Source: Phallusia mammillata (lineage: Eukaryota). Taken from it: a stretch of DNA of 64,000 bases. Positions 2,608-8,905 of this stretch are shown piece by piece. The notes beneath the pieces were generated by a model. It saw only the letters and a list, made by a program, of their open reading frames with translations. It was not told the origin of the DNA and searched no databases. The stretch spans positions 10,788,001 to 10,852,000 of the forward strand of contig OZ281499.1 in NCBI GenBank assembly GCA_965637545.1. Reading direction: 5' to 3'. Within the stretch, counting starts at the first letter, position 1, and each line of letters begins with the position of its first letter. The translations under genes and the position numbers were made by a program.

Positions 2608-3248
2608 ATAGTTTTTTTGTGGCAACAAATTCAGTACACTTATTTGAATACACACCAATTTTAATGGGAAAATTAACAGTGTTTTGAGTCACTTGTCATT
2701 CAAGATTCAACTACATGATTCTGTAAAAAGCAAACTTTTTGAATAAAATGTATTGAAACTTTGACATTATGCAAGATGATGTCCTACTCCTAACTTTCAT
2801 TGTTAAAACAGTGTGTTTTGTCTTCCTACAGTCTTACACCATAATGAATTAATGATCAACAACCTTTGTAAACAAAAATCCCCAACGCCTAGAGACCTCA
2901 GTCCAGATTAATAGAAATAGTATTAAAAATACAGTGATTTTTATAGTTTCACGCAAAATGCAAAAACAAGCAATTTTAAACAAGCATGCACAACTAGTTA
3001 CAAAAAGGTGAATTTGAGATTTCAAACCTAAATCAGAGACCGTTTAGTTTTGAAAAAATATAATTGGAATAGTGCTAAAACTTAAATCGGTTTTATTGCA
3101 ATGTGCGAGCATGACTATGCATATATTTGTTTGCCCAAACAAATCATTAGGTCAATATGTTCACGCATGCGTGTCGAACGCGTGGACTAGAACAGAAAAC
3201 AACTTATCTCTTCGTGAAGTGGACTGCATTGTGTTGTTGCATTAGGTT
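2608..3248. promoter_or_regulatory. Putative shared (bidirectional) promoter between the ZDHHC and ODC-like genes
   Basis: The two divergent ATGs are only about 640 bp apart. There is a 12-bp palindrome CACGCATGCGTG at 3162-3173. No transcript data. Confidence 0.35.
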
Positions 3249-6200
3249 ATGTCTTCATCAAACGTTTACGACATATGTTTTGCTGAACCGGTGTTTTGTC
3301 CTCGAGATCAGGTTGTAACGGTTGTTCCAGATGGAACTACCATTACAGATTTTGCTAAGCTCACAATAGCCGCGACCAAAAATGCTGAGGTATGTTTAGA
3401 TATGATTTTCCAGTATCGGTTACACAATCAGTGCATAGGCTAAATGTTAATTAACTTTTTGTTAAAGAACAGGGCAAATGTTTCGAAAGTCACTCAAGCG
3501 TTTAAGAAGTACTTTTTAACCCAACAGTTTGTTTGAGCAAGTAATCTTCTGTTGATCTTTTGTTAAAAAAAAACTATTGCGTCATGTTGCTGGGATTACA
3601 AAAAACGCTGTGTAAATTAAAATTGATAAAGTATGCCTGCAGGACATTCAACTTTATGCAGCATTTTGTTGTTTACCCACGTGTAGGTCTCAAGTTATTT
3701 GTCGCAGAAAAAGCCTATTTTCAACTAACAAAACTGTTCGATCCGTTCATAACAGACCCCAACAAAACAATAAGGTTGTAGACAAGCATTCAACAATTGC
3801 TCCGTTAAACCGGATGTTAAGACAACTTAAAATTACGCTATAGATCATGTCGGGAGGTTTGGCGGCACTATTTTGTATTTCAACTGAATTTTACAAGCAT
3901 GGTTGATTGGTTGGTAACAACTTTTAATTTTTATCATCATGTAGTACAGGGGTTGGCAACCTTTTTTCTACTGCGGACCGTTTTTTGAACTAAAATTTTA
4001 TCGCTAGTCGTCCTTAAAAAAACTACAAATTTTTAGCAACGAAAACGCCTAAATTAGTTTTTCATCCCAGGGATACGTGAGCTAATTGTTTGAAAGGTTT
4101 AACCTGAAAAATTATACGGCCCGGTAACGAACTCGGCGGTTGCCGACCACTGATGTATAATACTACATATATGTCAGCGCGTTTTACCATTATCCACTAA
4201 TTGTGCGCGTTTTGCGTTTCGCAAAACTACGGTGCTCTACTTTTCCCCTTGGTAATTGTTTTAGCGGAATTCTGCCGCTTTGTTGTCGTTCATCAAGAGA
4301 AATAATGTCAACTTAACATGACTCAACACAGTTTCCTTTGTCAAACACTGCAAAAATGAAGTAATGATGTTCCTTAGTTGATTTCCATTTGTTTTCAACA
4401 GGATTGGGACGAATCGTTTTATGTCTGTGATCTTGGTGTTGTAGTTTCGCAGTTTCATCGTTGGACACAAGAACTGCCTCGAGTTCAACCTTATTATGCT
4501 GTAAAGTCAAATTCACTTACTCCAGTGATTCGAACAATAGCTGCATTAGGAGCTGGATTTGACTGTGCGAGCAAGGTCAGTGCTGGATCAGATATTTTAT
4601 AGTACGCCAGGCCTACTTAAGGCGCCATACCCAATCAGCTGGCCACTAAGCATTCCCACATGGCAAAGGCGCAGCAAGTCTGCGGTGGGATCCACGATAC
4701 GAGCCATTTTAGAGGTGAGCACGATGTAAGTCGAACCACAACTAGATCAATACATTGCAACACGAAAAACACGGATTGATTTAGGTGTACTGAAAGAGTC
4801 AGTTTACTAAGTTATGATTATCCGCAACTTGAATCATCTGTATTGAGCGCACGTTGGTTCAGGAAGATTTCTGTAAAAACACAGTTTTACACAACTAGAT
4901 CAGTTAAAGGTCGGATTTACAACAGAATTTCTTCTCTTGACTTAAAGTGACATTTAAAGTAAGCGAACATTAGGAAGATGTTTTCAAGCATACTTAGACA
5001 GTCGGGTAAAAGTTTGACCCCCAAAAAACTAATTGTATTCCTTTTTTTTAGAACGAACTGAACAGTGTGTTAAAATGTGGTGTCGACCCCTCACGCGTCA
5101 TCTTTGCCAGCACTTGCAAGTTTGCGTCACACATTTGCGACGCGCGGCGACGTGGCGTCACAATGACGACAGTGGACAACGAAGACGAACTGATGAAGAT
5201 AAAAAGCATGTGGCCGAAAGTAAAGTAAGAATAGAATTGAAAAAAATGTTTTACAATTAGTACGTTTTCTTATTATAAACCGTGGGGCAAACATCAACTT
5301 CCTCCTGTTTTTAAGCATTGGGCTACTGTTAAATAGTTTTAGTCGAACGCTTTTGCCTCTTGAGCAGAGGTGGGCAGATAGATTAACTCAGCAACACGAA
5401 AGTTACCGTTACGAGTCAAAACCGAATTTAATTGCTACTGTAACATGCAAGGTAATTTCAGTTAATCTTAAAGTTTGTGACATCATAGCCAAGATTACGT
5501 CTATGCGCAAATAATCTGTTGTGATGGGAACAGGGGTATTACTCCGCAGAGGACACTCATTTTACGAAAAAGGTATGCTTAATACCAAATTGATTACCAA
5601 ATTAAAAGATGCAAATACTTTGCAGTTTCAAAGGCGCTTTAGGAGTTGTAAAAGCGAAACAACTTTGATTAAAAACGTGTTACCGTTGTGTTCAAAAGGT
5701 ATTGCCCGTCGCCGTACATACCTTTTTTCGAGTGTTCCCATGACCGTGAAGACAGTTTTTTAAATGTCTTCTTGTGCCTGTGGTTTTATAGTTTGCAAGA
5801 CGAACAAAATCTGGTTACAAATAAGCTTTGGCGAAGTCATTTTGTTTATCCCACAGTTCTTATATGTATTTTTTTCGTACTTTGAAATCGCCCTATTAGA
5901 ACTAAAAAGGCCCCTGTTGAAGAACCTAGTTTCCGGACTGTACTCATACATTAGGGTGACCAGACGTCCGGAATTTTCCGGACATGTCCGGAATTTGGGT
6001 GTAAAATCGGAGTCCGGAAAATATTTAAGCACACTCTTGTTGTCCGGAATTTAACGTCTTTTAATTCCAACCTACTGGTTCTTACCAAAATTGTTTTACT
6101 AGGAAACTCGAAGGTTTATTTTGTTTAGTATACGATGAATGAATTGAACGGCAATTTTTGGTTTATTTTGCGTCATGAAAGCTCTCGAAACCCTGTAAAA

Positions 6201-8905
6201 AGGAGGGTCGCCCTTAAACTATAAAAAGGGCCGGGTCGCCCTAAATCCCCTTAAACGAGTTGTATAGAACTTTTGTTTTTTTAACTTATTAAAAAATGCG
6301 TTTATCTTTGTAACAGTAATACTATTTAGACAAAAATGGGACTGTTTGGGTTGATAACACGTAAAAAACATGCAATATAACACAATATAACGCAAGTTTG
6401 GAGTCGCCAAAGAAATTTATTGAAACCGCCAGGAGTTGGAAATTTATTGAAACCGTACGTTGCTCACGTAGATATGGTGGCCCTGCAATACAAGGCCCGT
6501 TTTTAACCATGAAAAAACATTTCAGAGCATCAGAAGACGCCAAAAGTCCACAAAAGAGTTTATAAACCAGTGTACGACCGCGTATGTTTTTCCAATTGCC
6601 TGTTTTACTTAGAATAGTTCTGCGGATTCGAACTGATGACAGTGAAGCTGAAATTAAGTTTTACAACAAGTTTGGAGCCACTGTTGAATATTCCAAATAC
6701 CTAATACGAAAAGCTGCCGAACTTGGTCTCTCAATGATTGGAATCAGGTTCGATTGTTATAACCTATAAGCTTACAAATAATTTCAATCGGAGTTAAGCA
6801 TTCTGTGCACGCAATCCTTAGTTGACCTAAAGATTAAGTTTTTCTGAACTTAAAGTTTCACGTATTGGTCAAGAAAAGGTTTTTTAACCTTATAATTTTT
6901 GCGTAAGTGGTTAAATATTCTATGTGGACAAACAAGTTAAATCAGCTTGTGACAAATCAAAATAGGCTTTTGACATGTTTAATTGTTTGAATAAGTAATT
7001 TTTACAAAAACATTTGGTAAATTTTGTTTTCGTGTTGCATTTTATTTCAGCCGTATTGCGTATTGCAACGGCTTGATCATCCAAAACTAAATTCATTGAA
7101 AATATGTAAGAGGGATAAAATGATTCACATAGACATTATTTCAGATAAACGGTGAGGTTAGTAAAATCAGGCATGATCGGAATCATCAGTTATACGTTTC
7201 ATAACACAAATTGCAGTTTTCATGTTGGAGGTTGCACCGCCAGCGCTAAACCATACCAGAAGGCGATCAGAGACTCAAAGGATCTTTTTGATTTCGCAAA
7301 GGACGTTGGGTTTAACTTTCACTTGTTAGATATTGGTGGGGGATTTCCAGGAAGCACATTAGAGAACGAAAAAATCGCATTTGAAGTGGTAACAGTTGCT
7401 TTCGTTTGCTTATGTACATAGTACTTAACATAAACTAACAAGCAGGTTATAACATACGTACATCTTGACGCTGATGTTTGAACTTGGACCTCGGACATGA
7501 AAGCTAATCGATTCAAACATAGTAGACGTTTTTCTTACCTTTTCTTCATGAGGTTATGTAGTTCATAATTGGGGATGAAACAATCTAAAGATAAATCTAA
7601 AATGAAAATGATGAGAGAAGAACAATATTTGCAGATGGCAGCGACAATTCGAAATTGTTTGAACGAAAACTTTCCTGAACAAAGTGGGATAAAGATAATT
7701 GCTGAACCTGGTCGAATTTTTCCGGCAAAAGCCTGTTCCCTTGTAGCTAACATCATAGCAAAGAAAAACACCAACGGTTAGACAGATTTTATTTGCAAGC
7801 AATACCATTATGTTTTTTCACATATATATATTTTAAAGCAATGTATCTAAAGTATCTATCACAAATATAATTGTAGTTTAAGTCCCAATCTTACAATTTT
7901 TAAAGAAGTCCTCTGTTCTTTTTTTTTATAAATATAACAATAAGCGTTTCCAGTAAATTTGGATTGAACTTTCGGATATCCGTGTCCAAATAAATTGGCC
8001 TTCGTGAGGGTGAAAGAGGCAATTGTGAATAGCTCAAGATATTATATTACGCAATGTTTTTCAGAGGAAACAGCATACTACGTGGGTGACAGCATCTTCG
8101 GCGCTTTTTCGACTGGAATGTTTCGCAAGTTTAACTATGACACCGCGCCTGTTTATGTAAGTAGAAAGCTTGGACTTAATTGAAACCAATCAGACGCATA
8201 CTTACGATTACTTAGAGCAAGAAAAACGAAAAAATAAGTCAGACAGTTATTTATGGATCAACGTTAGCTGGCATGGACATGATAAATGGAAATGCTTTTT
8301 TGCCAGCGATGGACGTTGGTGATTGGCTGATATTTAAAGGTAACCATGCGATTACACTGTAACAGCTGTTCCCAACCTTTTTCGACAAAATTCCTTCTTA
8401 ACAATTCAAAACATTTTATTCCTCCCGAATATACTACATAGTAAAATATCCAAACCACACAACAATACTTTCAAATTGCTTTTTTATCAACTTTACTGGG
8501 TATATTTCCAAAACTTAAGTGTCTATTTACAAACCACATGTAAAAATTAAAGTACTTTTCTCCCCAGTTGATGTAAAAAAAAACACTTATCTGTTAAGAC
8601 GTTACATGGTTTAACTACTGATTTAATGTTCAAGAACGTAAACGATTATAGCGTAGGAAATGCTTACCTCAAATGATGTTTCGTTTGCAGAAGTTGGAAG
8701 TTACGGACCTTGTTTATCGGTAGGATTAAATGGGTTATTCACATACAAAGCAGATTACTTTGCTGAAGAAAACGTGATGTATGTTTTGAAATATTTGGAA
8801 AATCAGTTTAGAAACCCTGAAAATGTTTCTTTTGTTTTCAGGAAAAAACTTAAAAGTTCATGCCCATTTCCGACCTTGCTGTCCCAAACTTCTGCATTGA
8901 TGTAG
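3249..8905 (+). CDS. Ornithine decarboxylase-like protein (fold-type III PLP enzyme, 434 aa) with a non-canonical active site
   Basis: Exons: 3249-3389, 4402-4575, 5052-5224, 6613-6747, 7217-7388, 7635-7776, 8065-8156, 8216-8339, 8691-8778, 8842-8905 (1305 nt, open frame). Motifs: PYYAVKSN, GFDCASK, VLRIRTDD, KFGA, FHVGG, LDIGGGFPG, IAEPGR, YYVGDS, YGSTLAGMD, VGDWL, GSY, NG. Confidence 0.92.
3947..4152. mobile_element. hAT (Buster/Charlie-type) MITE
   Basis: TIRs CAGGGGTTGGCAACC / GGTTGCCGACCACTG; imperfect 8-bp TSD ATGTAGTA / ATGTATAA. Confidence 0.7.
4601..4672 (-). repeat. Diverged copy of the body of the tRNA-like cassette at 24678-25130
   Basis: AGTACGCCAGGCC...AAGGCGCCATACCCAATCAGCTGGCCACTAAGCATTC aligns by eye with AGTACGCCAGGGCCATTGAAGGCGCTATACCGAATCAGCCGGTCACCAAGCATTC. 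Confidence 0.65.

What the first reader, a model, noticed from the sequence alone, without database searches (positions are those of the whole stretch)
3249..8905. ODC-fold enzyme with an intact PLP site but a rebuilt substrate pocket and no catalytic Cys360
Seen: an open 434-aa frame over 10 clean exons. By-eye alignment to human ODC shows the cofactor residues kept: K69 (AAG 4504-4506), D88, E94, R154, K169, H197, the GGG loop, E274, R277, D364 and Y389. The substrate and catalytic residues are changed: WGPTCDGLD becomes YGSTLAGMD (C360L at 8264-8266, D361A at 8267-8269), and NCILYDH becomes STGMFRK (D332R at 8124-8126, a charge reversal). Also Y323F, Y278I, F397L/F400L and FHVGSG to FHVGGC. 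Known: D332 and D361 bind the distal amine of ornithine, and C360 protonates the decarboxylated intermediate. Diaminopimelate decarboxylases use Arg in the specificity element for a distal carboxylate. Mouse Gm853/LDC1 is an ODC paralogue switched to leucine. Vertebrate AZIN2 lacks C360, and AZIN1 keeps K69 yet does not bind PLP. Inference: this is either a decarboxylase with a new (acidic or hydrophobic) substrate or an independently evolved invertebrate antizyme inhibitor.
Basis: partly seen in the sequence, partly recalled or inferred. Interest (0 to 1): 0.8.

Follow-up and report, generated by a model that had tools for sequence, protein, structure and literature searches.

The report
Divergent ODC-like decarboxylase paralogue
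This is an intact, transcribed gene for an ornithine-decarboxylase-like protein that keeps its vitamin-B6 cofactor site but has replaced every ornithine-contacting residue; it is one of 14 extra copies next to a normal ODC, so it probably has a different, still unknown job.

Summary
A GT-AG gene at 3249-8905 (+) encodes a 434-aa ODC-fold protein (455 aa if the in-frame 63-nt intron 9 is retained). Spliced contigs from one run confirm six junctions, including exon 7|8, which carries the odd motifs. Aligned to vertebrate ODC, all cofactor and dimer residues are kept except S200G. All five ornithine-contacting residues are changed: Y323F, Y331F, D332R, C360L and D361A. F397L is changed too.

It is not the animal's ODC. 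A canonical ODC lies on another contig, and an antizyme gene exists. This gene is the earliest-branching of 14 non-canonical paralogues. They sit in a well-supported clade with Ciona and Clavelina "ODC-like/AZIN2-like" proteins, so the genome is probably a tunicate. Across that clade, 15 of 18 cofactor/dimer columns are invariant, against 18% of core columns, while pocket positions vary.

Best reading (about 0.5): a PLP enzyme that no longer uses ornithine. Rivals are an antizyme-inhibitor-like or heterodimer regulator (about 0.3) and a drifting copy (about 0.1).

ODC paralogues with altered key residues are already described, in Ciona among others, so this is a new member of a known kind. No substrate can be assigned. 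No structure could be predicted, because the spliced protein has no reference.

The parts
3249..3389 (+). Exon 1. ATG at 3249, with an in-frame TAG at 3243-3245 just upstream. The transcript contig reaches back to 3226.
   Evidence: the N-terminal 'VVPDGTT' motif is shared with paralogues
4402..4575 (+). Exon 2: 'DWDESF' clade motif and the PLP lysine (K69 = AAG 4504-4506) in YYAVKSN
5052..5224 (+). Exon 3 (donor GT at 5225): E94 and the antizyme-binding-element region
   Evidence: the 3' end is not covered by RNA contigs
6613..6747 (+). Exon 4: R154, K169, G171
7217..7388 (+). Exon 5: FHVGGC (H197, S200G) and the GGGFPG phosphate loop
7635..7776 (+). Exon 6: AEPGRIF (E274, G276, R277, Y278I)
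8065..8156 (+). Exon 7: specificity segment YYVGDSIFGAFSTGMFRK, with Y323F, Y331F, D332R (CGC 8124-8126) and H333K
   Evidence: (junctions 7775|8064 and 8156|8216)
8216..8339 (+). Exon 8: YGSTLAGMD, with C360L (8264-8266) and D361A (8267-8269); D364 is kept
8691..8778 (+). Exon 9 (88 nt, the family-conserved length): G387, Y389, LNGLF (F397L, F400L)
   Evidence: no RNA contig covers it
8779..8841 (+). Intron 9 (63 nt, GTATGT...TTTTCAG). It is in frame and stop-free, so retaining it would give a 455-aa isoform.
8842..8905 (+). Exon 10 and stop codon (TAG 8903-8905)
   Evidence: the Clavelina gene has a matching 10th exon

Best explanation
The gene encodes a cytosolic, dimeric, PLP-binding fold-type III (ODC-fold) protein that no longer acts on ornithine. 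It most likely works as an amino-acid decarboxylase, or a closely related PLP enzyme, on a non-basic substrate.

Shown: the gene is intact, correctly spliced and transcribed. It keeps the Schiff-base lysine, nearly all cofactor contacts and the K169-D364 salt-bridge residues (S200 is the only cofactor contact changed, to G). The animal has a separate canonical ODC. The gene belongs to a lineage-specific radiation in which cofactor residues are frozen and pocket residues vary.

Inferred: the side-chain pocket becomes hydrophobic (F323, F331, L360', A361', L397') with one cationic residue at its far end (R332, next to K333). That excludes a diamine tail. It would suit an acidic or polar-tipped side chain, or an aromatic one. 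Without Cys360, C-alpha protonation would fall to K69 or water. By analogy with ODC C360A/S mutants (my recollection of Jackson et al. 2000, not checked here), some turnovers might end in decarboxylation-dependent transamination, giving an aldehyde plus PMP.
For: The frame is open with GT-AG introns. Spliced contigs occur in one run only (X7), while the DNA-type run that was laid (X3) is colinear with the genome, introns included. PF02784 and PF00278 both hit. 14 of the 18 'key ODC residues' are kept and 0 of the 5 ornithine-contact residues (residue lists from PMC5574924 and PMC3543441). In the clade, 15 of 18 cofactor/dimer columns are invariant against 18% of 339 core columns, while positions 331, 332, 360 and 361 show 3-7 residue types. 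A canonical ODC lies at C5:4.531 Mb with all key residues. The root-to-tip path is only about 1.2-1.5 times that of intact sister paralogues. Precedent that 'AZIN-like' labels can hide enzymes: Xenopus AZIN2 is a lysine/ornithine decarboxylase (PMC6738921).
Against: There is no biochemical data and no structure model. C360 is the usual proton donor, and its loss is one hallmark of AZINs (PMC6738921). S200G and F397L also touch the 18-residue set. Transcript depth is low (about 5) and it was seen in one of three runs of the same study. Polymorphisms are 5 nonsynonymous to 4 synonymous, which is only weak evidence of constraint. No orthologue above 50% identity was found in other species, so long-term conservation of this particular pocket is unproven. 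About 5 of the 14 paralogues look decayed, so the family undergoes birth and death.
Confidence: 0.5

Rival explanations
1. It is a regulatory pseudoenzyme. It could be an independently evolved antizyme inhibitor that sequesters the animal's antizyme. Alternatively it could be a partner that forms heterodimers with ODC or with other paralogues, giving hybrid or dead active sites at the dimer interface.
For: C360, D361 and F397, the residues an ODC subunit lends to its partner's active site (my own knowledge of ODC structures, not tested here), are all changed. An antizyme gene exists at C1:7.8148 Mb (PF02100, 45.5 bits). The K169/D364/G387 dimer residues are kept. Ivanov et al. 2010 proposed exactly these roles for such paralogues (via PMC5574924). 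Planarian ODC5 (C360V) and ODC6 (K69S) form a complementary pair (PMC5574924). Here paralogue C1d has K69S but keeps C360.
Against: A protein that only binds antizyme has no need for K69, D88, R154, H197, the GGG loop, E274, R277 and Y389, yet all are kept. AZINs are reported to lack K69 and other essential residues (PMC6738921), and AZIN1 does not accommodate PLP (PMC3543441). Identity in the antizyme-binding element is 11/24, the same as the genome's own canonical ODC, so it is uninformative. D332R lies on the cis side, so any heterodimer site built on this subunit is also altered. C1d looks decayed.
Confidence: 0.3
2. It is a drifting duplicate. It is still transcribed and open, but under relaxed selection and on its way to loss, like several siblings in the family.
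For: The family shows birth-and-death evolution. C8a, C8d, C1d, C3a and C3b have lost core motifs, and a lone exon-8 fragment lies at C8:4.263 Mb. This gene has the longest terminal branch among the intact-looking copies (0.85; only the decayed-looking C3b is as long, 0.87). Expression is low and sporadic. 5 of 9 coding variants are nonsynonymous. No close orthologue was found.
Against: It is the oldest split of the 14, yet it has 434 codons without a stop or frameshift, ten clean splice sites with family-conserved exon lengths, and nearly every cofactor residue intact. That is very unlikely under neutrality, given 38-46% identity to all relatives.
Confidence: 0.1
3. It is a genuine ornithine (or lysine/arginine) decarboxylase that merely looks odd.
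For: ODC fold, PLP site and dimer residues are present. Entamoeba ODC is active on ornithine although Y323, Y331, D332 and D361 are replaced (PMC3543441).
Against: Both acidic residues that hold the distal amine are gone, and one is replaced by Arg (charge reversal). C360 is also lost, whereas Entamoeba keeps it. A canonical ODC exists elsewhere in the genome.
Confidence: 0.03

Closest known systems
Catalytically altered ODC homologues of invertebrates and protists (Ivanov, Firth & Atkins 2010, as summarised in PMC5574924), including Ciona and Branchiostoma paralogues and planarian ODC5/ODC6
   Same: They are ODC paralogues existing beside a canonical ODC, with substitutions in the 18 key residues (for example C360V in planarian ODC5). 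They duplicate within lineages and their function is unknown. Database relatives with a similar loss of C360 are Lingula 'AZIN2' (WGPTLNPDN) and Lytechinus 'ODC-like' (WGNTTSGFD).
   Different: This copy keeps R277 and the other cofactor residues, which the Lingula and Lytechinus proteins lack. It replaces all five ornithine contacts and reverses the charge at 332. It belongs to a 14-member expansion in one genome.
Ciona and Clavelina 'ODC-like / antizyme inhibitor 2-like' proteins (P0161, P0008, P0151, P0286, P0288)
   Same: They fall in the same well-supported clade (100/96). They share the DWDESF motif, Y356, the same exon architecture and the same invariant cofactor residues.
   Different: They keep C360 and D361 and have E/N/Q at 332. 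Identity to this protein is only 38-41%. They do not sit next to molybdo-flavoenzyme genes.
Vertebrate antizyme inhibitors AZIN1/AZIN2
   Same: They are ODC paralogues without ornithine decarboxylase activity, and loss of C360 is reported for them (PMC6738921).
   Different: AZINs are reported to lack K69 and other essential residues, and AZIN1 does not accommodate PLP (PMC6738921, PMC3543441). This protein keeps them. It arose separately, in a clade with Ciona and Clavelina proteins. Antizyme binding was not tested.
Mouse Gm853 / ODCrp (leucine decarboxylase) and Xenopus AZIN2/ODC2 (lysine/ornithine decarboxylase)
   Same: They are ODC paralogues that turned out to be enzymes with a different or broader substrate (PMC7671201, PMC6738921).
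   Different: Both keep all 20-22 critical ODC residues including the Cys (PMC5518511, PMC6738921). Here the pocket itself is rebuilt.
Chlorella-virus arginine decarboxylase (PDB 2NV9/2NVA) and bacterial DAP decarboxylases
   Same: They are fold-type III decarboxylases. From my own knowledge, not tested here, the residue equivalent to ODC D332 on the specificity element helps set substrate choice, and DAPDC uses Arg for a distal carboxylate. 2NVA is the best PDB match to exon 8.
   Different: Both keep the Cys-Asp/Glu pair, and cvADC keeps 'CDG'. This gene is not related to them by descent beyond the superfamily.

Membership tests
Fold-type III (group IV) PLP-dependent decarboxylases, Pfam Orn_Arg_deC_N + Orn_DAP_Arg_deC | N-terminal barrel domain PF02784 and C-terminal sheet domain PF00278 | tested here: met
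   Exons 2-6 hit PF02784 positions 2-246 in order (E from 2.4e-13 to 3e-4 per exon). Exon 8 hits PF00278 at 23.3 bits against a cut-off of 23.
Fold-type III (group IV) PLP-dependent decarboxylases | Schiff-base lysine and cofactor contacts (K69, D88, R154, H197, G235-237, E274, R277, Y389) | tested here: met
   All are present; only S200 is changed, to G.
Eukaryotic ornithine decarboxylase (EC 4.1.1.17) | Ornithine-contact residues Y323, Y331, D332, C360, D361 (PMC3543441) | tested here: not met
   They read F, F, R, L, A, so 0 of 5 are kept.
Eukaryotic ornithine decarboxylase (EC 4.1.1.17) | Full set of the 18 key residues (Ivanov 2010, via PMC5574924) | tested here: not met
   14 of 18 are kept; S200G, C360L, D361A and F397L are changed.
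Eukaryotic ornithine decarboxylase (EC 4.1.1.17) | It is the genome's orthologue of metazoan ODC | tested here: not met
   The canonical copy is at C5:4.531 Mb. This gene falls in the clade of non-canonical Ciona and Clavelina proteins.
Antizyme inhibitor (functional class) | Binds antizyme more tightly than ODC does and has no catalysis | not testable with these tools
   An antizyme gene is present. Identity in the antizyme-binding element is 11/24, the same as the genome's own ODC.
Antizyme inhibitor (functional class) | Degenerate cofactor site (loss of K69 and other PLP residues; PMC6738921, PMC3543441) | tested here: not met
   K69 and the other PLP contacts are kept, S200G apart.
Vertebrate AZIN1/AZIN2 orthology group | Descent from the vertebrate AZIN duplications | tested here: inconclusive
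   The gene lies in a clade with Ciona and Clavelina proteins, separate from vertebrate ODCs. No vertebrate AZIN sequence was available for the tree.
Diaminopimelate decarboxylase | Closest relatives and solved structures are DAPDCs | tested here: not met
   PDB hits are ODC, AZIN1 and cvADC only. The best database relatives are metazoan ODC-like proteins.
Mouse leucine decarboxylase (Gm853) type | All critical ODC residues kept, with specificity changed elsewhere (PMC5518511) | tested here: not met
   The pocket residues themselves are replaced. Orthology was not tested.

The most novel reading that the evidence does not exclude
With Leu in place of the proton-donor Cys, the protein may be a decarboxylating aldehyde-forming PLP enzyme (decarboxylation-dependent transamination) for an acidic or aromatic amino acid. 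Its product would be handled by the neighbouring tandem array of at least 7 aldehyde-oxidase/xanthine-dehydrogenase-like genes (C6:10.800-10.944 Mb). That would make this an animal metabolic gene cluster, set within a wider tunicate radiation of ODC-fold enzymes that feeds specialised amine metabolism.
Probability: 0.05. Interest if true: 0.85.

Novelty: new member of a known kind. Interest (0 to 1): 0.42.

Why it matters
ODC paralogues that have lost key residues are usually annotated automatically as 'ODC-like' or 'antizyme inhibitor 2-like' and assumed to be regulators. Here the pattern points the other way. In a 14-copy lineage-specific family the cofactor site is frozen while the specificity pocket diversifies: 332/360/361 read E-C-D, E-C-S/T and E-M-S in intact copies, N-L-D in the decayed-looking C3b, and R-L-A here.

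If even some copies are enzymes, this family would be an unexplored source of amine (or aldehyde) biosynthesis in an animal group rich in unusual amine-derived metabolites. This copy would be the most extreme pocket to assay. If instead they are regulators, the genome would hold an unusually elaborate ODC/antizyme control layer.

Either outcome can be tested with one expression construct and an amino-acid panel.

Tried and rejected
- **Structure prediction and fold search.** I did not run these on the spliced 434/455-aa protein. Complex prediction was not used for the same reason.
- **Exon 7 against PDB sequences alone.** This gave nothing; the exon aligns only within the full-length alignment.
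- **Exact look-up of the 81-aa last-exon ORF.** It is not on record.
- **Search for close orthologues.** The phmmer search of 1.84 billion representatives with exon 2 gave at most 64% identity in that exon, and the best full-length hit is 43% identical overall. A word search with Clavelina P0008 and a profile that included this gene's exons (A3) found only Ciona and Clavelina clade members. No orthologue with the L-A/R pocket turned up. The species' own proteins seem absent from, or withheld in, that collection, so this absence is weak evidence.
- **The 9-exon, 455-aa model.** I first preferred it because the retained stretch aligns loosely with the ODC C-terminal helix. I now rank it second, because the 88-nt exon 9 is conserved in paralogues and in the annotated Clavelina gene.
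- **The '332-aa open frame' reported for the C5 locus.** It could not be reproduced, so it was not used as a query.
- **dN/dS.** Not attempted: the nearest relatives are 44-46% identical, so synonymous sites are saturated.
- **Gene-cluster idea.** The Clavelina and Ciona clade members have no molybdo-flavoenzyme neighbours. The other paralogue clusters lie on contigs C1, C3 and C8, where no PF02738 hit was found. Adjacency here is a single instance.
- **Organism name.** It is coded in the run tables and was not pursued.

Full report
**1. Observation**

The region 3249-8905 (+) holds a multi-exon gene. Splicing the exons by script gives an open frame with GT-AG at every intron. My first reading of exon 3 (donor at 5220) broke the frame; the donor at 5225 restores it.

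Intron 9 (8779-8841, 63 nt) is in frame and stop-free, so a 455-aa retained form is also open. A spliced protein-to-genome aligner that I wrote recovered the model exactly in a self-test. It also recovered exons 2-8 from three independent templates: Clavelina P0151, Ciona P0161 and guinea-pig ODC P0204. Pfam places PF02784 positions 2-48, 49-104, 107-157, 159-211 and 217-246 on exons 2-6 in order, and PF00278 on exon 8.

**2. Transcript evidence**

One run (X7, labelled as probable RNA) holds two spliced contigs:
- 3226-3387|4400-4573|5050-5215
- 6613-6744|7214-7387|7634-7775|8064-8156|8216-8305

The DNA-type run X3 is colinear with the genome, introns included. Two other runs of the same study as X7 lack the gene.

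Six junctions are therefore confirmed. They include 8156|8216, which frames both unusual motifs. Junctions 3|4, 8|9 and 9|10 are not covered.

Exon lengths of 174, 173, 135, 172, 142, 92, 121-130 and 88 nt recur in the paralogues. They also recur in the annotated 10-exon Clavelina gene. I therefore favour the 434-aa model, and the 455-aa form remains possible.

**3. Residues**

I aligned the protein with a vertebrate ODC that carries human numbering.

Kept: A67, K69, D88, E94, R154, K169, G171, H197, G235-237, E274, G276, R277, D364, G387, Y389, N398.

Changed: S200G, Y278I, Y323F, Y331F, D332R, H333K, W356Y, C360L, D361A, F397L, F400L.

phmmer of exon 8 against PDB sequences independently aligns NEKISQTVIYGSTLAGMD with T. 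brucei NEKLYPSSVWGPTCDGLD. The segment from YYV to R332 aligns without gaps in all family members.

PMC3543441 names Y323, Y331, D332, C360 and D361 as the ornithine-contacting residues of human ODC; none survives here. Of the 18 'key' residues used by Ivanov et al. (listed in PMC5574924), 14 survive.

**4. Genomic context**

The genome is 240 Mb in 312 contigs, and the window is C6:10,788,001-10,852,000. It has many ODC-fold loci. Draft models show the following.

| Locus | Content | 332/360/361 or state |
|---|---|---|
| C5:4.531 Mb | one canonical ODC (IWGPTCDGLD) | all key residues plus D332 |
| C8:4.265-4.298 Mb | five non-canonical paralogues | mostly E332, C360, D361 |
| C1:25.755-25.815 Mb and 7.72 Mb | six paralogues | E332 with C-S, C-T or M-S |
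| C3 | two paralogues | one reads N-L-D; both look damaged |
| C6 (this gene) | one paralogue | R-L-A |

About five copies look decayed: C8a, C8d, C1d (K69S, D88N, R154L), C3a and C3b. A lone exon-8 fragment lies at C8:4.263 Mb. An antizyme gene is present at C1:7.8148 Mb.

**5. Phylogeny**

The tree used 44 sequences and 410 columns under LG+C20+F+G4. The bootstrap had not fully converged, so support values are rough.
- The 14 non-canonical paralogues form one clade (99/92).
- That clade sits inside a clade with the Clavelina proteins (98/92) and Ciona ODC-like (100/96).
- The C5 gene stays among ordinary metazoan ODCs.
- This gene is sister to the other 13 (90/94), with a terminal branch of 0.85. 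Its root-to-tip path is 1.2-1.5 times that of intact siblings.

The genome is therefore most likely a tunicate, though not Clavelina or Ciona. Identity to every relative is 36-46%.

**6. Pattern of constraint**

I compared 14 intact clade members. Only 18% of 339 gap-free core columns are invariant, but 15 of 18 cofactor/dimer columns are. The exceptions are S200, one G387E, and H197 in the Ciona sequences, where an insertion makes the alignment doubtful. Pocket columns 323, 331, 332, 360 and 361 carry 3-7 residue types.

This is what one expects of an enzyme family changing substrates. It is the opposite of what is reported for AZINs: they lack K69 and C360 (PMC6738921), AZIN1 does not accommodate the cofactor, and AZIs largely keep four of the five substrate residues (PMC3543441).

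**7. Mechanism**

Shown: the fold, the cofactor residues, the dimer salt-bridge residues, expression, and the existence of a separate ODC.

Inferred: the pocket is hydrophobic (F323, F331, L360', A361', L397') with Arg332/Lys333 at its distal end. It cannot hold a protonated amine. It would suit an anionic or polar-tipped side chain, or an aromatic one. Loss of the Cys proton donor should slow the reaction or divert it towards decarboxylation-dependent transamination. I put 0.5 on 'active PLP enzyme with a non-ornithine substrate' and cannot name the substrate.

**8. Rivals**

- **Regulator (0.3).** The residues lent to the partner subunit (C360, D361, F397) are exactly those lost, an antizyme exists, and the literature proposes AZIN-like or heterodimer roles (PMC5574924). 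The paralogue C1d (K69S, C360 kept) would complement this protein as planarian ODC6 complements ODC5, but C1d looks decayed.
- **Drifting copy (0.1).** The family shows birth-and-death evolution, expression is low, and coding variants are 5 nonsynonymous to 4 synonymous. However, 434 clean codons and an intact cofactor site on the oldest branch argue against this.
- **True ODC (0.03).**

**9. Surroundings**

The gene sits at the edge of a tandem array of at least 7 aldehyde-oxidase/xanthine-dehydrogenase-like genes, at C6:10.800-10.944 Mb. An earlier scan note (s1-399201) raised the idea of a gene cluster.

I found no such neighbours for the Clavelina or Ciona clade members. The other paralogue clusters lie on contigs where no PF02738 hit was found. 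The link therefore rests on one adjacency (probability about 0.05).

**10. Novelty**

ODC homologues with altered key residues, including in Ciona, were catalogued in 2010 and remain uncharacterised in tunicates. No functional paper was found. C360-less relatives exist in Lingula and sea urchins.

This gene is a new and extreme member of that known kind. The 14-copy expansion with a diversified pocket is the more interesting result at family level.

**Limits**

There is no structure model, no orthologue of this particular copy, and no dN/dS. The paralogue models are template-driven drafts whose termini are unreliable.

Noticed in passing
G000 C1:25.755-25.815 Mb, C1:7.72 Mb, C3:20.93 and 29.98 Mb, C8:4.265-4.298 Mb (loci L021-L034): There are thirteen further non-canonical ODC-like paralogues in tandem clusters, with pocket residues (332/360/361) varying by cluster: E-C-D, E-C-S/T, E-M-S, N-L-D. 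About five look decayed. C8b and C8c are near-identical tandem copies.
   Followed up: partly
G000 C5:4,531,000-4,536,300 (L029): This is the genome's canonical ODC, with all 18 key residues and D332 (IWGPTCDGLD).
   Followed up: partly
G000 C1:7,814,820-7,815,128 (-) (L041): A single antizyme (PF02100) gene lies here, about 95 kb from the ODC-like paralogue C1f at 7.72 Mb. The match has one in-frame TAG, which could be the frameshift site or an intron; I did not examine it.
   Followed up: no
window 9,900-63,400 and on to G000 C6:10.944 Mb: A tandem array of at least 7 aldehyde-oxidase/xanthine-dehydrogenase-like genes (PF02738) on both strands starts about 1 kb downstream of the ODC-like gene. 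Only two other PF02738 loci were found, both on C5.
   Followed up: partly
window 3947-4134, 4762-4886, 8389-8565: These are high-copy interspersed repeats inside introns 1, 2 and 8. Summed contig depth is up to 100-1000 times the flanks in every run, and many variant joints occur there. The G+C-rich 4098-4134 end is shared with many other loci.
   Followed up: no
G000 C8:4,263,007-4,263,127 (L035 9007-9127): An isolated copy of exon 8 (and part of exon 9) of paralogue C8a lies here without the rest of the gene. It is a duplicated fragment.
   Followed up: no
window 6686, 6711, 7382 (run X7) and 4539, 8138, 8141, 8754, 8785, 8811 (run X3): Coding variants seen in other individuals are E188K, K196T, F263F, I93M, Y337Y, D338D, D406V, V416V and R425I. 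The last two fall in the optional 63-nt stretch.
   Followed up: partly
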